Source: Octopus sinensis
Lineage: Eukaryota
DNA length: 64,000 bases
Reading direction: 5' to 3'
Assembly: GCF_006345805.1 (NCBI RefSeq)
Contig: NC_042998.1
Coordinates: 48,112,001-48,176,000, forward strand
The stretch's first letter is position 1; each line of letters begins with the position of its first letter. Under the pieces are notes generated by a model. The model was not told the DNA's origin. It worked only from the letters and a program-made list of their open reading frames with translations, and did no database searches. Shown here piece after piece: positions 1,954 to 61,810 of this stretch. A program made the position numbers and the translations under genes.

Positions 1954-2206
1954 ATGACTGGCTTCAATGCTGGTGGCACATAAAAAGCACCAACCGATCG
2001 TGGCCACTGCCAGCCTCTCCTGGCCTGTAAAAATCACCCTCTACACTCATGGAGTTGTTGGTGTTAGGAAGGGCATCCAGCTGTAGAAACACTACCAGAT
2101 CAGACTGGAGCCTGGTGCAGCCTCCTGGTTTCCCAGACCCTGGTCAAACAGTCCAACCCATGCTAGCATGGAAAACAGATGTTAAACGATGATGATGATG
2201 ATGATG
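1954..2206 (+). mobile_element. 5'-truncated RTE LINE 3' tail (family C)
   Basis: gttaggaagggcatccagctgtagaaac...catgctagcatggaaaacagatgttaaac followed by (GAT)n. Confidence 0.85.
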
Positions 2207-2566
2207 TTCATGTAGCAAGCAACAGAACACAGAGGAGTATCATACATGAAAGGCTAACAGACCAGCCAAGCATTATTCATGAAATGGGGGAGGTGGGGGA
2301 GGTATTCACAGAATACCATGTAGGCAATGTAATTGCAAATTAATTGGTGTTAAAAAATGAAAATAAAAATATACGTAAAAAAAAAAAAAAGCAAGCTAAT
2401 TTTGAGAAATGGTAACAGGATGTAAAAGTAGACCTACTTACCAAAATCCCATCTCACACAAGTCCAACATCCAATGACATCATTACACAAAAACCAAAGA
2501 TTGCGCACCATGAAGAGAGCTTACCATTACCACTGTAAATAAATAAATAAAGAGAAAAACAATACT

Positions 2567-7204: not shown

Positions 7205-8338
7205 CCAAAGTGTCCAACTTTATTTTTTTTTCCACCAAAACTAATACCATGTGAGCAAAATTCTTTGGGTGATAGATGACACCACCCTTCCTGCACATCC
7301 GTGAAAATTCTCATGCCAGTTGGCCACATCAGTTCCTGGGTATTACACCTAGAGTACAGATGCGTAGTGCATGCTCAATGGATTTTCATTTTCAATGGAA
7401 TTTGTAGTTTTGTGGTACCAGTGCCGGTGGTACCAGTGCCGGTGGCACATACGAAAACCATCCGAACGTGGCCGTAGCCAGTACCGCATTGACTGGCCTC
7501 CGTGCTGGTGGCACGTAAAAAACACCATCCGAGCGTGGCCATTCGCCAACCTCGTCTGGCACCTGTGTCGGTGGCACATAAAATCACCCACTACACTCTC
7601 GGAGTGGTTGGCGTTAGGAAGGGCATCCAGCTGTAGAAACACTACCAGATCTGACTGGCATGGTGCAACCTTCGGGCTTCCCAGACCCCAGTTGAACCGT
7701 CCAACCCATGCTAGCATGGTAAGCGGACGTTAAACGATGATGATGATGATGATGGTGATGATCAAATGCATCAAGCAGAGATATTGCATCAAGTTTTGCT
7801 GAAAGCTTAGCGATACTCAAGCTCAAACCAACCAAAAGATTCAACAGGCTTTTGGCTATAATACTATGGACAAAACTCAGATCAAGAAGTGGTACAACCA
7901 CTTCAAACATAGCCATGCCTCAGTAGAGAGAGAGAGAGAGAGAGACGCAGGCCATCCACAAGACAAAACGAGGAGTAGATTGAGAAAGTTTGGTAAATAA
8001 TCATGGAAGATCATCTGGTAACAATCCAGGAGTTTGCTCACAAAGTGGGAATATGTACAGGACTGGTGCATTCCATTTTAATGGAGGATTTGTGCATGTG
8101 GAGAGTGTTAATAAAATTTGTCTCCAAGGTGCCAGTGGAGCAGCAGAAACAACTCTGCATGGAAATCCCTCGGGACATGCTAGACTGTGCAAACCATGAC
8201 CCAGACTTCATGAAAACCATCAACATTGGTGAAGAGACATGGGCTTACAGTCTCTGCTCAATGAATTTGGTCATCTTGCATGAAAATGAAAATCCAATGA
8301 GCACACACTACATGGCTGTACTCTAGGTATAACAGTTA
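7205..8338 (+). mobile_element. Decayed mariner transposon (N-terminal transposase) with fold-back end
   Basis: 7753-8250 reads ..QRYCIKFC*KLSDTQAQT..IQQAFG..KKWYNHFK..MEDHLVTIQEFAHKVGICTGLVHSILMEDLCMWRV..DPDFMKTINIGEETWAY (HTH plus the GDETW motif). 8251-8338 is an inverted copy of its 5' UTR/start. Confidence 0.85.
7410..7760 (+). mobile_element. RTE LINE 3' tail (family C) inserted in the mariner
   Basis: Repeated gtgccggtggcac units, the gaagggcatccagc core and a (GAT)n tail. Confidence 0.9.
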
Positions 8339-10434: not shown

Positions 10435-10623
10435 AGAAAATAAGAGGGAGGAAATGAGAAGGAGAGAAAAAGCTATGAAGTAGCACTGCCTAGTTCCGAG
10501 CCAGCATGAAAAAACAGATGTATTCTGGTGCCAATATGTGTGTATGTTATGTTTATTTCATATATATATATATATATATGTGTGTGTATATATATGTATG
10601 TATGTATATAGACACGCACATAT

Positions 10624-10664
<41 letters not shown>

Positions 10665-11969
10665 TATATGTATTATGTGTATGCATGTATGTGTATGCAT
10701 GTGTGTATGTGCAAGTATAAGGCAAAGCTCACAAGCCTTAAATTCTAGATAATAAACCATTATGTACACATGAAATATTTTCTTTGTTTTATTTTTGTTC
10801 TTGTTGTAAATGTTGCATTTATTCAGATGACTTAGTCTTTCTCTTTCTCTCTCTATCTCTCTCTCTTTACTTCTCCCTCTTTCTCTCTCATTCTAGCTGT
10901 CTATCTCTTCGTCTATTTATCTCTTGAAGTTTCATTACTAGTCAAACAATTTTAGGACATTTTGCAAAGCCTCTCATGGCATTTACAATCCTGGCATAGA
11001 TGAGAAATATTTTTCTTTCAAATTCTCTCTCTCTCTCTCTCTCGCTCTCTCTCCCACTGTTAGTTTGACCCTCTCTTCTTTATCTTCTTCTCTCACACTC
11101 TCTTTCCAATCTACTGAAACTTGTAAACTTATCAACAATGTTGCTATGTAATGGGAACTAGGTTCATTGAATTAAGTCATTTTACTGTTACAAAAGCAGC
11201 AGCAGCAGCAGCAGTAGTAGCAGCAGCAGCATTAGTAGTAGTAGTAGTAGTAGTAGGAGGAGGAGGAGGAGGACCAGCAGCATCTATTTCTAACATAAGC
11301 ATGGGACAACAGACTCTGGAGGGATGGTCAGTTAATTGAATTAACCTCAAGTATTTTATCAATCTCCATTTTATCAATCAAACTGCTATATTGTGAGACA
11401 TATAGGTACAAAACTTAAACATTACACGAATTAAACATAACAGACATGCACACAAACATACACATACATATATACATAAACTGTTGAGCAGTAGATTACA
11501 GGTTATGCAATATAACCTGTAGGTTTCATGCCCACTATTGCACTTTGCCGCATTGATAATTTTTCAAACCTATTGGCCAGAGACACAGCCCTTTTATATG
11601 TTGGAGGTATACATGGCCCTAGTTGGCTCGTAATTTGATAAAAAAAAACTGGGATGAAATGTAGTGAAAAGTTATAACATATTGCAGGAGGAAAGAAGAG
11701 TTGCTTCCCATGGATTGATGTCAGCCATTGTTGAAGTGTATCAGTTGAGTGCACAGGCTTAGGAAAGATCTTTAACCTTTTTCCATCCAAGGAGTGTTTT
11801 AACCCAATATTCTACACTTTATTACATATAATTTTACCTTCTTCGAGTTCCACCATGTGTGGTGTGTGTGTGTGTGTTTGTCTGTGTAATGGGGGTGTAT
11901 GGCTTAGTGTCTAGTGTGTTGCATTCTGTCAGGATGGAAAGCAAAAACCAATCTTACTGGAGTTTAAGC

Positions 11970-27945: not shown

Positions 27946-28171
27946 AAAGTTATTAGAAACCCTGAAAACTCAGAAGCCTAATAAATCACAGACATAGAAA
28001 TAGGTCTCGGGTTTTAGTCCTGCAGCATGGCAGCTGGTATGAATGTCTTCTACTATGACCTTGGGCTGACCAAAGCCTTGCAAGTGGATTTCATATGCAG
28101 AAACTGAAAGAAGCCCATCAAAAGCATGTGTGTGTGGAAGCCCATTATGTGTGTAGGTGCATGTATATGTG

Positions 28172-28215
<44 letters not shown>

Positions 28216-28234
28216 AAATGTGACTGCATGTGTA

Positions 28235-28415: not shown

Positions 28416-28694
28416 TATATATATATATAATGTACTGATCCGTGATAGAGAATTCAACAAAAAAAGTGCTCCATCTGGTGAGAGATAAATATTATGTATT
28501 TAAAGGTCACAATACATGTATTAAAGCGCTACTAATAGTTTCATATGTTGAAAAAACTCCAATATAATCCAGTATAGGTCTTCTTATCAGTTTTATAATT
28601 ATTTAGGGTTGCAGTAACTTCTGCCTCATATATGATAGATTTAGTCATACACCGTTGGTCAAGTGGACAGGATCCTGGGTCGCAATGTATATAA

Positions 28695-28925
28695 TCATCA
28701 TCATCATTATGAACATTTAACATCTGTTTCCTCCATGCTGGCATGGGTTGGGCAGCTTGACAGGCAAAGCCAGGGGCTGCATCAGGTTCCATAGTCTGTT
28801 TTGGCTTGGTTGCTATGGCTGGATACCTTTCTTAATGCCAACCACTCCACAGAGTTTACTGTGTGCTTTTTACATGGCACCATCACCAATGCTTTTTACG
28901 TCGCACCAGCACTAACACCAATACT
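28695..28925 (-). mobile_element. Diverged RTE 3' tail (family C)
   Basis: (CAT)n, ccatgctggcatgggttgg and cttcttaatgccaaccactcc. Confidence 0.7.
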
Positions 28926-29944
28926 TTTTACATGGCACCTTGGTTTTAGTATTTCAATCTTGTTGTGGTGGGCGGGTCTTCTCAAGTACAGCAATTCACC
29001 ACATACCTCGGCCCTCTGTCATCACCTTCATAAGGTTCAGTGTTTTGAGATCAGCCTTCAATACTTCATCCCATGTCTCCCTGGGTTTCCATCTTCAACA
29101 ACTTCCTTCCACTTTAAGTAACTGGCACTTGTTTATGAATGATTAACTCGAAATAATATGAATAAATAAGCGTTACTTTTGACAGAGTAATCTGAAGGCT
29201 AGAGTGTTAAAGCCCAATAAAAACTCACATAGGCCCAAACATTCTTGATATCACAAACAAACAAACTAGATGAAGTATGAAAAAAAATAGTGTTTAACTG
29301 TTCTACAAATACTGTTTGGTTCCATGCCTCAAAACCTGTTCATATATTCAGCATTTCCTCAACTCCTTAAGTTTGCAGAATTGGCTTGTCTTGGTGACAC
29401 TATTTCGAAATAAGTTTGTTAATAAGAGAGAACATTATTATGAAGGATTTTTCACAGATGCACAAGCAACATGATCCAGATCTTGGGAGTGTGATTTGGA
29501 GAATCTGACCTCTAACCACAGTGTTTTAAATTTTGTGGTGTCTTCATCTCAAAGCCTCTAGACATACTATGAAAGAGAAGTGGTGGTCTTTGTTTCTAGA
29601 TGTTTAATAGGGAATGTACCTTGTTACTTGCCAACACAGAAATACACATATACATATGCATATACATGTATGTCTGCGACATACCACATGTATACATGTG
29701 TGTATGCAAAAAGAAGTGCCTTGTTGAAGGACACAATGCAATGCCTGGTCCAGAAATCAAATCCATGATCTCGAAATCATCAGTTCAACACTCTAGTGAG
29801 AAGACCATGCACTTTCAGAGTAAAGAGCTGCAGAACAGGACACACATAGGCATGGCATCTGGCCAATACAGAGGAATAGCAATGTTCATGTACAAACAGT
29901 AAATTCAATCCCTGTACCTAATGATTGTCAGCTTAACACCATAA

Positions 29945-30951: not shown

Positions 30952-31454
30952 GAAGTGCTGAGTTCTAATTGTGGAGGGTACCTGTGGAAAGGGGCAAACC
31001 TAGGAAGATGTGGGACGAAGTGGTGAGAAAGGATCTTCAGATGCTGGGCTTCACTGAGGAAACAAGGGACTGGGAGATGTGGTGATTTGCAGTACTTGAA
31101 AAGACACGTCAAGCTAAGCAGAATTGCTGTCTTCCATGCATACAGGCTTGTCCTTTCAGGTGCCAGTGCCACTTAAAAAGCTCCTGTGCCAGTGCTGCAT
31201 TGATGCATCCATGCTAGTGGCACATAAAATGCACCCAGCTGTAGAAACCATGTCTGGACGGCTACCTGCTAGCCAGCTCCATGTCAAACCATCCAACACA
31301 GGCCAGCATGGAAAGCGGATGTTAAATTACGAAGCCATAGAAACTATGCCAAAACAAATAGGGAGCCTGAACAGCCCTTCAAGCCAGTCAGCTCCTGTTA
31401 AACCATCCAACCCATGCCAGCATGAAAAGCAGATGTTAAACAATGATGATGATG
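30952..31454 (+). mobile_element. RTE-clade LINE 3' end: ORF terminus plus 3' UTR
   Basis: VEGTCGKG/KPRKMWDEVVRKDLQMLGFTEE.TRDWEMW*FAVLEKTRQAK, followed by family C sequence and (GAT)n. Confidence 0.8.
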
Positions 31455-31699
31455 TTAGTCATGCCAAATCACCAGCATCCAAATAACCACACCAAGTCAT
31501 CTCATTCCATTAAGGTAGTCTTACATAGTTCTAAAACAAGACAACATTGGTCACAACCTGAAATGTCTGCTTGATCAGGGTTGCCCTAGGATTCAACAAT
31601 AACAACCATCACTGCACATAATTTTGTTCAGTGTGGACCTCAATCAGAGAGAAGAGCAACAGATCGGGATCTGTGAGTCTGTAGATCACATCTAGTTAT

Positions 31700-32255: not shown

Positions 32256-33255
32256 GCTCAGAGAAAGAAAAGACAAGTTCAATCATTTTGATTTTATGGA
32301 TGACCTAAAATCTATGGATAAGATGAAAATCAGCTGAATTCAGTGATTCAAACAGTGCATTGCTTTAGCACAGATATCAAAATGGAATTTGGACAGAAAA
32401 AGTTTGGAATGTTGATTCTAAAAAGAGGTGAAGGCCAACAAGAGGCTGGCGAAAAGTTGCCCACAGGAGAGGTAGTAAAAAGAATAGATAAGGATGGATG
32501 CAAGTATCTTGGAATTTTAGAAGTTGACAAACTGATGGAAAGCCAAATGAAAAAGATATTCTCTCAGGAATATTACAGAAGGCTAAGTTTGATTTTGAAG
32601 ATTAAATTGAATAGGAGGAAGAAGTTCCAAGAAAAAAATTCATGGGCACTTATTCTCTTGAGTTATGGAGTAGAAGTACTACAATAGTGAACAGAGAAAC
32701 TACAATCCTTAGATAAGAAAACAATTAAATTACTGACAAAATATGCTGTGTTCCACCCTTCCACTCATAAAGTGATGTTAACAGGCTATACCTTATGAGA
32801 AAGAAAAGAAGGCAGGGATTGATAAGTTGTGAGGATTGTTTTCAGACCAAGGTAAACAATACTGTTTGTTGTATAAAGAATACAAAAGAAGCATTACCAG
32901 TAAAAATAAAATAAAGAAAGCTGCCCTATCACATATGGAAAACAGTCAAGACAGGATGAATTACAAAATAAAGACAGAAGCAAAGAAGGGAAAGTAACTG
33001 GGAGGATAAGAAGATGCACGATCAGTTCTTGAAAGATCTATCAAAGGATGCAGACCAAGGTACAGCATACCAACAAACATTAAGAACTAACTACATCACC
33101 CATAGAATTGATCATGCAGTAGAAACAGATAAATGCAGAATGTGTGGTGAAACTGGAGAGACAGTGTGGCATATTTTTAAGCAAATGCTGCAAATTAATC
33201 TGGAGAGAATATATAAAAAAAGGTATGACAGTGTCACCAGAATGATGCAGTCCCC
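32256..33255 (+). pseudogene. R4/Dong-clade (RLE-type) non-LTR retrotransposon ORF fragment
   Basis: FMDDLK..QTVHCFSTDIKMEFGQKK..CKYLGILEVD..EYYRRLSLILKIKLN; later HDQFL..LRTNYITHRID..DKCRMCGETGETVWHI..KRYDSV (RT palm/thumb plus CCHC knuckle), with stops and frameshifts. Confidence 0.85.
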
Positions 33256-33583
33256 TTGAAACGAGAAACTCCAACTAGGGTCAATCAAGGAACCCCACCA
33301 CTGATCCACAAAAGGTATGAGCCCTCCCACCTGCTCTCCAATCAATAGGAACATTCTGAGAGTGGGGCCATTCACTCTAACCATTTTTGTCACGGTCACC
33401 CATCTTTCCACAAATTCACTGGGAGGCAGCACTTTCCTCTCTACTTTCACTTTCCTTTCCAAGCAGAACTTAAAAAAGTTGACGAGAGCTTTAAAAATAA
33501 TAGTCATTTCAAATTTTGGCACAAGGCCAGTAAGTTCAGGGAAGGTGGGGAGTAAGTTGACTACATTGACCCCAATTTTTTTT

Positions 33584-40359: not shown

Positions 40360-40734
40360 AGAGTGTACTACTAGTAGTGTCTATTATTTGTGTGTCTCAG
40401 CTATTTTGTAGCTTATTTCTTTATCAGTAGTTTCATGAATGTATGTATAGATGTGTGTGTGTGTGTGGTGTGTGTGTGTATGAAGTAAAAAGAGAGAGAG
40501 AGAAAAGGAAAGAGAGAGTGTATGCTGTAAAACTTTACATATTAGGAAGTGGGTGTATATTTACAGAATATTTGTGTATGGATGGGTATTTGTGCATGCA
40601 TATGTGTGTGTGTGTGTATGCATACACACACATACACATATATTGGTGAGGAGGCATGGCCCAGCGGTTAGGGAATTCTACTCATGATCAGGAGATCGTG
40701 GTTTCAATACCTAGACTGTGTAATGAATTGTGTT

Positions 40735-40879
40735 CATCATCATCATCATCGTTTAAGGTCCGCTTTCCATGCTAGCATGGGTTGGACGGTTCAACTGGGG
40801 TCTGGGAAGCCCGAAGGCTGCACCAGGCCAGTCAGATCTGGCGGTGTTTCAACAGCTGGATGCCCTTCCTAACGCCAAC
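40735..40879 (-). mobile_element. 5'-truncated RTE 3' tail (family C)
   Basis: Minus strand gttggcgttaggaagggcatccagc...ggaaagcggaccttaaac(GAT)n. Confidence 0.9.
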
Positions 40880-40889
40880 AAATAATGGA

Positions 40890-41010
40890 ATGCTTACAGC
40901 ACCTAGGTTTCCCAAGCGGTCACCCATCTAAGTACTAATTAGGCTTGATGTTGCTTAACTTCGGTGATCAGACGAGAACCGGTGCTTACAACGTGATATG
41001 GCCGTAAGGC
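40890..41010 (-). rRNA. Full-length 5S rRNA copy (probable pseudogene)
   Basis: Minus strand GCCTTACGGCCATATCACGTTGTAAGCACCGGTTCTCGTCTGATCACCGAAGTTAAGCAACATCAAGCCTAATTAGTACTTAGATGGGTGACCGCTTGGGAAACCTAGGTGCTGTAAGCAT. About 120 nt; helix I CTTACGG/CTGTAAG pairs; box A and box C are recognisable; apparent CpG-decay changes. Confidence 0.95.
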
Positions 41011-41402
41011 GATTGAGTTTGTCCTTGAGTATTCTTGAACAAAACACTTCATCTCACATTGCTCAGCGACCACTCCAACACCTGACATGTGGTACACAGT
41101 GCAACTGTTCAGACAACATCGATTTGAGGTCGGAAGTGAGCCGATGTGCAGCACGAACATTTGATCACGATAAACAAATCATTTGTGCACGTCATTTGGC
41201 AAGCTGAACGCTGATACGTCATCTTCGATGGGGGAGTCCATCATACATAGGCACAAAAATGGTTGTAAGGTAAGATGTCTGCTTCGCAACTACATGGTAT
41301 CAGGTTCAGCCCCACTGTAGGGCACTTTGGGGAAGTATCTTCTACTATAGCCTCGGGTTGACCTAAACTTTGAGTGAATTTGGTAGACAGAAACAAAGAA
41401 GC

Positions 41403-45399: not shown

Positions 45400-45580
45400 A
45401 CAAGCAATCATCATATGATCTTCATTAGCTTACCGCTGTTTCTGCCATAAGATGCAGTGGACTTGTAGTTGATATTCAAATACACACACATACACACATA
45501 TATATATAGACAAACACACATATATATATCTTGACCAGAAGCCATCTTAAATTTGTCTCAAATCCCTCACTCTCATCCTG

Positions 45581-58004: not shown

Positions 58005-58309
58005 ATAGTAGGAATAGTTTATTATGTTGAATTTGTAATCTTTATCTTTTACTTGTTTTAATCATTTCAGTCATGGCCATGCTACAACACCACCTGGAAC
58101 AGTTTAGTTGAACAAATCAACACTAGTACATAGCTTTAAGGCTGGCAATCTTCCAGTCTCTTTTGCTGAATCACTTTTGACAAGGTGAGTGAGGAATAAA
58201 ATGGAATAAAATTTCATTTTTAATAATTCCAATATATCAAGATTAAAAAACAATAGCTTCTTCAGGTAGCATGAGAAAGTTCTCCTAGTCAGTTGTATGT
58301 TAATTTCAT

Positions 58310-58460
58310 ATATGTATGCATGCATGCATGCATGCATGCATGCATGCATGCATGCATGCATACATACATACATACATACATACATACATACATACATACA
58401 TACATACATACATACATACATACATACATACATACATACATACATACATACATACATACA

Positions 58461-61061: not shown

Positions 61062-61343
61062 AGATAAGAAAATGGAGAAATACATCTAAATCAAATATCA
61101 ATTACCAGATAATACTCAATCACATACTTTATTAAACCACCACATAAGAGACTGTAGGGTTAAACATAAAAAAATATATATATATATATTTCCTGTATAT
61201 ATATATATATATATAATATATATATATATATACACACACACACATATATATACACATACACACATATTTGCATATATTCATACATATATATATATACATA
61301 TGTACGTATATCTGCATGTATAGGTATACATGTGTGTGTGTGT

Positions 61344-61388
<45 letters not shown>

Positions 61389-61400
61389 CATATATGTAAT
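60760..61400. repeat. AT-rich minisatellite with recurring TTCCTG anchors
   Basis: ttcctgtatata recurs about 7 times within (TA)n. Confidence 0.9.
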
Positions 61401-61810
61401 ACACACATACACATACACACACAAAAGATATGTTTTAAATACCTACAAACATTCATAAAATACTTGAGATATGGAAATATATATTTAGATGGCAGATGCC
61501 AACTAAGTATTACTGTTCTGCAAGCTCATGATTATCAATGCCACTTCCATCACACACTTCAACGATGATATATGAAAGGATAATGATAAAGATGATGGCT
61601 GAAGAAAAACATGCAAGTAACTCTAGTCATTTAGTGAATTCTTTTAATGAGACAATATTCATGTCTATCTACAGAGAAGTACTGTTGTGGGTTTTCTTTA
61701 TCTTACGCACTAGATATTTCAGTCAACCTCTGTACACTACTACAGTCAAGGACAGGGCTCTTGTGGTAGTTCAACATGCAAGGAACAGTAACTAAATCTT
61801 CCTTAATTCA

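What the first reader, a model, noticed from the sequence alone, without database searches (positions are those of the whole stretch)
40646..41250. 5S rRNA fused to an RTE LINE tail, inserted as one block into a SINE (SINE3-like chimera)
Seen: on the minus strand a complete ~120-nt 5S rRNA (41010-40890) is followed after about 10 nt by the last ~145 nt of the RTE 3' UTR and its (GAT)n tail (40879-40735). The block splits a tRNA-SINE whose head ends at 40734 and whose body resumes on the other side. An imperfect candidate TSD abuts both ends: gaattgtgtt (40725-40734) and gattgagtt (41011-41019), the latter directly next to the 5S 5' G. Known: 5S head plus LINE tail is the architecture of SINE3 elements, and template switching makes small-RNA/LINE chimeras (e.g. 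U6-L1 in mammals). Inference: this is either a one-off RTE template-switch product or a member of a cephalopod 5S-derived SINE family. I do not know of a described 5S-RTE SINE in octopus but cannot search.
Basis: partly seen in the sequence, partly recalled or inferred. Interest (0 to 1): 0.75.

Follow-up and report, generated by a model that had tools for sequence, protein, structure and literature searches.

The report
5S rRNA fused to RTE tail
A reverse-transcribed copy of 5S ribosomal RNA joined to the last 145 bases of an RTE-type jumping gene sits inside an older SINE; the structure is real, but this is the known way 5S-headed SINEs arise, so it is a tidy example of an ordinary kind.

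Summary
On the minus strand lies a full-length 5S rRNA (41010-40891; Rfam 100.6 bits). An 11-nt linker TTCCATTATTT follows, then a 145-nt LINE 3' end finishing in (GAT)n (40879-40735). Five other young copies of that tail in the window continue upstream into LINE 3' UTR. Two old copies keep an ORF end, so the focal tail is a 5'-truncated LINE tail. The 276-bp block interrupts a tRNA-type SINE between head and conserved core. It is bracketed by an imperfect 9-10-nt duplication (p about 0.02). The 5S and the tail are similarly decayed (about 2%), and the block starts exactly at 5S +1. Both points fit one RNA-mediated insertion.

I could not decide whether this is one copy of a 5S-headed SINE family or a one-off template-switch chimera. 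No tool here reaches cephalopod DNA, and every search was empty.

The literature lowers the novelty. SINE3 families with RTE tails are described (HaSE3, CoeSINE5, SINE-1_Pmo). The giant squid has about 24,000 5S-derived loci. A curated Octopus vulgaris library lists four "SINE/5S" families (9.8 Mb).

I favour family member (0.55) over one-off (0.3). Interest is low to moderate.

The parts
40645..40734 (+). Host SINE, 5' part: tRNA-like head (box A/box B region) up to the insertion point
   Evidence: Aligns to the heads of intact copies at 45401, 23616, 52235, 3848, 55685 and 24046. ARAGORN calls no tRNA, as expected for a diverged SINE head.
40725..40734 (.). Candidate target-site duplication, copy next to the (GAT)n end (GAATTGTGTT; sense orientation AACACAATTC)
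   Evidence: 7/8 anchored match to the other copy, p about 0.023.
40735..40879 (-). 5'-truncated 3' end (145 nt) of an RTE-type LINE, ending in (GAT)n at 40735-40750
   Evidence: 87-95% identical to five other copies that extend further into the 3' UTR. Old copies at 28690-29010(-) and 30969-31500(+) keep an ORF C-terminus upstream of the same tail.
40880..40890 (-). 11-nt linker TTCCATTATTT between 5S and tail. Best reading: the 3' trailer of the pol III 5S transcript, ending in a U run. Origin not proven.
   Evidence: It is not homologous to the RTE UTR (A1). It is the only T3 run in the block and there is no T4. It also resembles the downstream flank ATTCATTA.
40891..41010 (-). Full-length 5S rRNA sequence, slightly decayed
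   Evidence: Rfam 100.6 bits, model 1-120. 30/34 pairs canonical. C16.A65 and C18.A62 sit in CpA context.
41011..41019 (.). Candidate target-site duplication, copy abutting the 5S 5' G (GATTGAGTT; sense orientation AACTCAATC)
41020..41246 (+). Host SINE, 3' part: conserved core (TTCTTGAACAAAACACTTCATCTCACATTGCTC...) and body. The end coordinate is approximate.
   Evidence: Aligns to the cores of intact copies. Unrelated repeats start at about 41247. About 14 extra nt (TTTGTCCTTGAGTA, 41018-41031) occur relative to relatives.

Best explanation
The 276-bp block (41010-40735, minus strand) is a dead retrocopy of a composite pol III RNA: 5S rRNA, a short trailer and the 3' end of an RTE-type LINE. 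That is a SINE3-type element mobilised by the RTE machinery.

Proposed mechanism: a master copy is transcribed by RNA polymerase III from the internal 5S promoter. Transcription runs through the weakened T3 stretch and into the LINE tail. The RTE protein recognises the shared 3' tail and (GAT)n repeat. It nicks the target and primes reverse transcription there. It copies tail, linker and 5S to the RNA's 5' end and integrates the cDNA with a 9-10-nt target duplication. Here the target was an older tRNA-type SINE, hit in antisense orientation.

Shown: the parts, their order and orientation, the exact breakpoint, truncation of the tail relative to LINE copies, interruption of the host SINE, start at 5S +1, and similar decay of head and tail.

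Inferred: that the template was already a chimeric SINE transcript, meaning a multi-copy family exists. Also inferred: pol III read-through, the RTE partner, and that the linker is the 5S trailer.
For: Architecture.

RNA-mediated, single block: the upstream flank abuts 5S nucleotide +1 with no spacer DNA. The TSD is anchored at both ends of the whole block (p about 0.023).

Similar age of head and tail: 3 private changes in 145 nt of tail (A1). Three transition-type broken pairs in 120 nt of 5S, two of them in CpA context.

Transcribable in principle: no T4 terminator inside the block; the first T4 lies 203 nt downstream.

LINE origin of the tail: two old copies run ORF end, UTR, tail, and are 50% identical at the peptide level, E=2e-11. 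RTE LINEs end in microsatellites or TGA repeats (PMC9115989, PMC3272025).

Family prior: A. dux has about 24,000 5S-derived loci, 'many likely SINEs'. The O. vulgaris curated library has 4 'SINE/5S' families covering 9.83 Mb. That is about 225 bp expected per 64 kb, against 276 bp seen. The same architecture has amplified as families elsewhere: HaSE3, CoeSINE5, SINE-1_Pmo.
Against: No second copy of the junction was seen, and none could be looked for. All searches for cephalopod DNA were empty.

The head is a complete 5S with a high model score. It shows no excess of changes beyond neutral decay. It is followed by a trailer ending in a T run. This is what a fresh 5S primary transcript captured by template switching would look like.

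The tail's closest relative (c7607) is a LINE-type fragment, not a 5S-headed copy.

The published 'SINE/5S' class is not described at sequence level. Its 'recently active' members average about 6 kb, which is not SINE-like, and shared tails could inflate its coverage.

The organism was not verified with tools.
Confidence: 0.55

Rival explanations
1. One-off chimeric retrocopy. During target-primed reverse transcription of an RTE RNA, the reverse transcriptase copied the last 145 nt. It then jumped to the 3' end of a nearby 5S primary transcript (5S plus an 11-nt trailer ending in U's) and copied it to its 5' end. The result is a single U6/L1-style chimera that never amplified, or at most a proto-SINE.
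For: The 5S is full-length and in sense orientation, 5' of a 5'-truncated LINE 3' end, and the block is flanked by a TSD. These are the hallmarks listed for U6/L1 chimeras.

The head is indistinguishable from a functional 5S plus about 2% neutral decay.

The linker ends in a T run, as a pol III transcript would.

The tail belongs to a subfamily whose other member in the window is a LINE fragment.

Only one 5S is present in 64 kb.
Against: Base rates. One-off small-RNA/LINE chimeras are rare per genome, whereas cephalopod genomes are reported to hold thousands of 5S-derived loci and annotated 5S-class SINE families.

Human 5S/L1 chimeras are mostly antisense and truncated, unlike this one.

Nothing in the window contradicts this reading directly.
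Confidence: 0.3
2. Two independent insertions at the same spot. The RTE tail inserted first into the SINE with a roughly 14-nt duplication AAC(T/A)CAATTCATTA (plus TTT filler). A 5S retropseudogene then landed inside the upstream duplicate. The reverse order is also possible.
For: The linker resembles the downstream flank just past the TSD (ATTCCATTA vs ATT-CATTA). The unanchored local score of 6.5 is reached by only 3.6% of random placements. As a result 'AACTCAATC'+'TTCCATTA' reads like a split copy of 'AACACAATTCATTA'.
Against: It needs two retropositions within 14 nt. It needs a tail-less 5S insertion with almost no TSD of its own, plus extra unexplained bases (TTT, an extra T and C).

The repeat is not anchored at the tail's boundaries; the anchored score for tail-only is 0.

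Head and tail show the same low decay.

Statistically it is no stronger than the simple whole-block TSD.
Confidence: 0.08
3. DNA-level origin: a dispersed ('orphon') 5S gene or a fragment of a 5S array moved by recombination, with an RTE tail that happened to insert beside it. The 5S might even be functional.
For: The 5S scores like a genuine gene and keeps a recognisable internal control region (the comparison with Xenopus boxes is from memory).
Against: The flank abuts 5S +1 exactly, and the host SINE sequence continues on both sides, so no spacer DNA came along.

Three helix pairs are broken by transition-type changes.

There are no tandem 5S units.
Confidence: 0.03

Closest known systems
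SINE3 families with RTE-derived 3' parts: HaSE3 (Helicoverpa armigera), CoeSINE5 (coelacanth), SINE-1_Pmo (python)
   Same: 5S rRNA-derived head in sense orientation, followed by the 3' end of an RTE-type LINE. HaSE3's partner HaRTE1.1 ends in TGA trinucleotide repeats, the same repeat as (GAT)n in another register (PMC3272025; PMC5786205).
   Different: Those are consensus families with many copies. They usually have a diverged head and an extra body (HaSE3 shares a body with HaSE1; CoeSINE5 and SINE-1_Pmo also carry RTE 5'-UTR pieces). Here a complete, barely diverged 5S joins the tail through only 11 nt, and the copy number is unknown.
Small-RNA/LINE chimeric retrocopies (U6/L1; 5S/L1) formed by template switching or RNA ligation
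   Same: The small RNA lies 5' of a 5'-truncated LINE 3' end, in one TSD-flanked insertion. In U6/L1 the small RNA is full-length and in sense orientation (PMC11838501).
   Different: Those are made by mammalian L1 with poly(A) tails. Reported human 5S/L1 chimeras are mostly antisense and truncated at 5S loops. Here the LINE is RTE-type with a (GAT)n end, in an invertebrate.
Cephalopod 5S-derived repeats recorded in genome papers
   Same: About 24,000 5S-derived loci in Architeuthis dux, 'many likely SINEs' (PMC6962438). A 'SINE/5S' class of 4 families, 9.83 Mb, in the Octopus vulgaris library (PMC13282606 supplement).
   Different: No sequences, junctions or LINE partners are given there. Whether those families have this 5S-linker-RTE tail structure is unknown.
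Plain 5S rRNA retropseudogene
   Same: Starts at +1, full length, slightly decayed, dispersed.
   Different: A plain pseudogene has no LINE tail. Under SINEBase criteria, extra non-RNA sequence separates SINEs from RNA pseudogenes (PMC3531059).

Membership tests
SINE (SINEBase definition, PMC3531059), class SINE3 | Short (<1 kb), interspersed, non-tandem repeat | tested here: met
   The block is 276 bp, a solitary insertion inside another repeat, with no tandem 5S.
SINE (SINEBase definition, PMC3531059), class SINE3 | At least 60% identity to 5S rRNA over at least 60 nt (5S-derived head) | tested here: met
   Full-length match to the Rfam 5S model, 100.6 bits, positions 1-120.
SINE (SINEBase definition, PMC3531059), class SINE3 | [quoted passage not shown] | not testable with these tools
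   No cephalopod genome is reachable. Junction and 5S-end scans of the metagenome, genome and viral collections returned 0. ORF-based look-ups were empty. There is only one copy in the 64-kb window.
SINE (SINEBase definition, PMC3531059), class SINE3 | Extra module beyond the RNA head: a LINE-derived region and simple-repeat tail shared with a partner LINE | tested here: met
   The 145-nt tail is shared with LINE 3' ends in the window and ends in (GAT)n.
SINE (SINEBase definition, PMC3531059), class SINE3 | Transcription by RNA polymerase III from the internal promoter through the whole element | not testable with these tools
   Only indirect evidence: the 5S internal control region is recognisable and there is no T4 terminator within the block.
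U6/L1-type chimeric retrocopy (one-off) | Full-length small RNA, sense orientation, 5' of a 5'-truncated LINE 3' end | tested here: met
U6/L1-type chimeric retrocopy (one-off) | One pair of TSDs flanking the whole chimera | tested here: inconclusive
   The 9/10-nt duplication is imperfect, p about 0.023. A competing unanchored repeat has p about 0.036.
U6/L1-type chimeric retrocopy (one-off) | Junction unique in the genome, or independent chimeras with different breakpoints | not testable with these tools
   Same limitation as for copy number.
RTE clade of non-LTR retrotransposons (source of the tail) | Single ORF (EN+RT) grouping with RTE in RT phylogeny | not tested
   No RT domain is attached to this tail in the window. 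Only the last 40 or so codons survive in two old copies. Homology searches with them found nothing.
RTE clade of non-LTR retrotransposons (source of the tail) | Short 3' UTR ending in a simple (often trinucleotide) repeat instead of poly(A) | tested here: met
   All young copies end in (GAT)n. This agrees with RTE descriptions in PMC3272025 and PMC9115989.

The most novel reading that the evidence does not exclude
The block is a single-copy 'SINE at birth': a one-off chimera made when an RTE reverse transcriptase jumped from its own RNA onto the U-tailed 3' end of a 5S primary transcript. As far as I found, it would be the first documented small-RNA/RTE chimeric retrocopy in a mollusc. It would preserve the exact founding junction, with the terminator shortened to T3 and the 5S head intact, from which 5S-headed SINEs are thought to arise.
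Probability: 0.3. Interest if true: 0.45.

Novelty: new member of a known kind. Interest (0 to 1): 0.25.

Why it matters
If this is a family member, it gives a concrete sequence and junction for the so far undescribed '5S' SINE class of octopus genomes. It also links that class to an RTE partner, which is useful for repeat annotation in genomes where SINEs and RTE LINEs are the dominant and reportedly active repeats.

If it is a one-off, it shows that RTE-type enzymes, not only mammalian L1, make small-RNA chimeras. It would also capture the proposed founding step of SINE3 families.

Either way it extends known biology and does not change it.

Tried and rejected
(1) Copy counting by DNA. I ran exact-pattern scans for the junction and for the 5S 3' end in metagenome contigs, genome contigs and viral contigs. 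All returned 0. A tail 19-mer scan of genome contigs gave one chance hit (L001) and one fish-like LINE contaminant (L002), neither cephalopod. These nulls say only that no cephalopod DNA is in those collections.

(2) Copy counting by protein. Exact look-ups of two junction-spanning ORFs found nothing. A homology search with the 51-aa junction ORF found nothing.

(3) Getting octopus loci through annotated TE proteins.

(4) Pfam on window ORFs gave only a weak Mos1 HTH.

(5) Literature. No paper prints the tail motif or a cephalopod 5S gene with flank. Walker & Doolittle 1983 and Albertin 2015 are not held. The term '5S-RTE' appears in no paper.

(6) The L002 LINE C-terminus gave only a weak similarity to the octopus ORF end (E=0.004), so it was not used as evidence of clade.

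(7) I considered a functional orphon 5S gene and rejected it (see rivals).

(8) I did not run the search of protein representatives. The word-indexed search of the same collection had found no shared words even for the abundant tail part, so a hit was very unlikely.

Full report
WHAT IS THERE

Reading the minus strand from 41010 to 40735 gives three abutting pieces.

(a) A 120-nt 5S rRNA. Rfam's 5S model matches 41009-40891 end to end (model 1-120) at 100.6 bits against a gathering score of 38. With the preceding G the gene spans 41010-40891. It is the only 5S-like sequence in the 64-kb window by BLAST. The same holds in a permissive covariance-model scan at E<=10, whose other hits are microsatellite noise against miRNA models.

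(b) An 11-nt linker, TTCCATTATTT (40890-40880).

(c) A 145-nt sequence, GTTGGCGTTAGGAAGGGCATCCAGC...AAACGATGATGATGATGATG (40879-40735).

THE TAIL IS A TRUNCATED LINE 3' END

The 145-nt piece recurs five more times in the window at 87-95% identity. A 28-mer from it is found 6 times against 0 expected. All other copies carry homologous sequence further upstream: tandem-like 'GGTGGCACGTAAAAAGCACC...' units ending in '...CACTACACTCACGGAGTG'. They are 5'-truncated at different points, as LINE copies are.

Alignment A1 shows that the focal copy loses homology exactly at GTTGGCGT, where the linker and 5S take over.

Two older, more diverged copies (28690-29010 minus; 30969-31500 plus) still show the end of an ORF before the UTR and tail. 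The peptides are '...KPRETWDEVLKADLKTLNL...W*IAVLEKTRPPQQD*' and '...RGKPRKMWDEVVRKDLQMLGFTEE...W*FAVLEKTRQAKQ'. They are 50% identical, E=2e-11 pairwise. So the tail is the 3' end of a protein-coding LINE.

I accept the label 'RTE-type' for three reasons. The element ends in a trinucleotide repeat rather than poly(A). RTE elements are described as ending in microsatellites or TGA repeats (PMC9115989; PMC3272025). RTE is the most abundant LINE group in Octopus vulgaris. It is not confirmed by RT phylogeny: no RT domain is attached to this tail in the window, and homology searches with the ORF end found nothing.

THE BLOCK INTERRUPTS A SINE

On the plus strand, 40645-40734 is a tRNA-like SINE head. 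41020 onward is the conserved core 'TTCTTGAACAAAACACTTCATCTCACATTGCTC...'. Joined, the flanks align across the join to six intact relatives in the window. From my own knowledge this core resembles the Deu domain; I did not test that.

The block lies antisense to the host. Relative to the relatives, which are only about 65% identical, the focal SINE has about 14 extra bases (TTTGTCCTTGAGTA) just right of the insertion. This is a near-duplicate of the core's start, and I cannot explain it.

ONE EVENT OR TWO?

The upstream flank abuts 5S nucleotide +1, with no spacer DNA. That is the mark of a cDNA copied to the 5' end of an RNA.

The sequences abutting the two ends of the whole block are AACTCAAT-C and AACACAATTC in sense orientation. 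An anchored match this good arises in 2.3% of 20,000 random placements of a 276-bp element in the window. No anchored duplication flanks the 5S alone or the tail alone.

Decay is alike in both parts:
- The tail has 3 private differences in 145 nt from its subfamily (A1). It is 95.2% identical to its closest relative, c7607.
- The 5S has 30 of 34 consensus pairs intact. Three of the four exceptions are C.A or A.C, one transition from a Watson-Crick pair. Two of them (C16.A65, C18.A62) have the A after a C, as CpG decay would give.

With about 2% divergence, roughly 1.6 broken pairs are expected, so 3 is not an excess (my estimate). All this favours one RNA-mediated insertion a few million years old. 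The dating is a rough scaling of the JC-distance calibration quoted in PMC13282606.

One observation clouds this. The linker also resembles the downstream flank just past the TSD (ATTCCATTA vs ATT-CATTA). That is an unanchored score reached by 3.6% of random placements. This allows a two-step history, with the tail inserted first with a 14-nt TSD and the 5S later landing in the upstream copy. It also allows a target-derived filler. I rank these low because they need more events and leave extra bases unexplained. The native 5S gene's 3' flank would settle it.

HOW IT MOST LIKELY WORKS

An RTE-encoded protein nicked the host SINE and primed on the (GAU)n end of an RNA. It copied 145 nt of RTE tail, then the linker and the whole 5S. 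The cDNA was joined with a 9-10-nt target duplication.

The template was one of two things:
- (i) An already chimeric pol III transcript from a master 5S-tail element, meaning a SINE3-type family.
- (ii) Two RNAs joined on the fly, when the reverse transcriptase jumped from RTE RNA to the U-ended 3' terminus of a 5S primary transcript.

The linker ends in TTT, and the block contains no T4 run. The first T4 on the sense strand is 203 nt downstream. A copy like this could therefore in principle be read through by pol III into the tail, which a SINE master needs. This is inference, not a test.

FAMILY OR ONE-OFF?

The window cannot say, and no tool here reaches cephalopod DNA. The following were all empty:
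- exact scans of the metagenome, prokaryote-genome and viral collections;
- exact ORF look-ups;
- three protein homology searches.

One tail 19-mer hit, L002, is a fish-like LINE contaminant in a mycoplasma MAG.

For a one-off:
- the head is a complete, essentially undiverged 5S plus what looks like its trailer;
- the tail's nearest relative is a LINE fragment.

For a family, the published base rates count:
- about 24,000 5S-derived loci in the giant squid, 'many likely SINEs' (PMC6962438);
- a 'SINE/5S' class of four families covering 9.83 Mb in a curated O. vulgaris library (PMC13282606 supplement).

The second figure implies about 225 bp per 64 kb, essentially one such element per window. 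One-off small-RNA/LINE chimeras number only tens to hundreds per genome in mammals.

Caveats:
- That class is not described at sequence level.
- Its 'recently active' members average about 6 kb.
- I did not verify the organism.

I put the family reading at 0.55, the one-off at 0.30, two independent insertions at 0.08, and a DNA-level or orphon-gene origin at 0.03.

COMPARISON WITH WHAT IS KNOWN

A 5S head plus an RTE-derived tail is an established SINE3 architecture. Examples are HaSE3 in Helicoverpa, whose partner ends in TGA repeats, CoeSINE5 in coelacanth, and SINE-1_Pmo in python (PMC3272025; PMC5786205). SINE3 is said to have arisen independently many times (PMC10886601).

A full-length small RNA 5' of a truncated LINE tail in one TSD-flanked insertion is the U6/L1 pattern. 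5S/L1 chimeras are also known, though mostly antisense and truncated (PMC11838501).

Against SINEBase's criteria (PMC3531059), the element meets those for size, 5S identity and the extra LINE module. The copy-number and pol III transcription criteria could not be tested.

No paper I could search describes an octopus 5S-RTE SINE by sequence.

VERDICT

The finding is real and correctly dissected. It is a new example of a known kind, not a new kind. Interest is 0.25. It would rise to about 0.45 if it proves to be a single-copy founding chimera.

Noticed in passing
L002:1100-1180 (JBOFZK010000057.1, Metamycoplasmataceae MAG) vs window 40845-40885: The start of the octopus tail (GTGGTTGGCGTTAGGAAGGGCATCCAGCTGTAGAAAC) shares an exact 19-mer and about 30 nt of similarity with 'GGGTTGTGTTAGGAAGGGCATCCAGCGTAAAAAC' in a 1.5-kb contig. 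That contig is plainly eukaryotic (fish-like) LINE contamination. There the motif lies about 190 nt upstream of a LINE endonuclease ORF start and downstream of another LINE ORF end. This may be a conserved LINE/SINE domain shared across phyla; from memory it recalls the V-SINE/DANA-type core, which I did not verify.
   Followed up: partly
window 28690-29010 (-) and 30969-31500 (+): Two old, diverged RTE-type 3' ends retain the last 40 or so codons of the ORF (KPR(E/K)xWDEV..DL..L...W.(I/F)AVLEKTR) followed by UTR repeats and the (GAT)n tail. They are the only link in the window between this tail and coding sequence.
   Followed up: yes
window 41018-41031: The host SINE has about 14 extra bases (TTTGTCCTTGAGTA) directly beside the insertion, compared with six relatives. 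They form a near-duplicate of the adjacent core start (TTCTTGAAC...). This could be a subfamily feature, a small tandem duplication, or a by-product of the insertion.
   Followed up: partly
window 40880-40890 vs 40715-40728: The 11-nt linker resembles target sequence just beyond the TSD (ATTCCATTA vs ATT-CATTA; p about 0.036, unanchored). The origin of the linker (5S trailer or target-derived filler) is unresolved.
   Followed up: partly
window 32322-33256 (+): A degraded LINE of another clade: a post-RT region with 'CKYLGILE' and a C-terminal 'CRMCGETGETVWHI' zinc-knuckle-like motif, spread over three frames. There was no Pfam hit and no database homologue at the sensitivity available.
   Followed up: partly
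window 7607-8330 (+): A young RTE tail fragment (7607-7751, the closest relative of the focal tail) sits next to a mariner-like remnant. That remnant has a weak Mos1 HTH_48 match (22.5 bits, below the cut-off) and the text 'DPDFMKTINIGEETWAY'.
   Followed up: partly
window 1987-2213 (+): The tail copy at 2057-2203 appears flanked by an imperfect 8-9-nt duplication (ATGTCATG / ATGTTCATG). This suggests that short, slightly decayed TSDs like the focal one are usual for this LINE family. It was judged by eye only.
   Followed up: no
window-wide, e.g. 10560-10700, 28140-28230, 58300-58420, 61220-61420: Dense (TG)n/(TA)n/(CT)n microsatellites give many sub-threshold 'miRNA' hits (mir-297, mir-466, mir-3149 and others) in the permissive Rfam scan. 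All are below gathering scores and should be ignored.
   Followed up: yes
PMC13282606 Table 1 and Suppl. Table 1: The Octopus vulgaris library also lists 'U' and 'U-L1' SINE classes (snRNA-headed elements or chimeras). Its 'recently active' 5S class is 7 insertions totalling 42 kb, about 6 kb each, which is odd for a SINE. That may reflect 5S rDNA units or composite consensus sequences.
   Followed up: no
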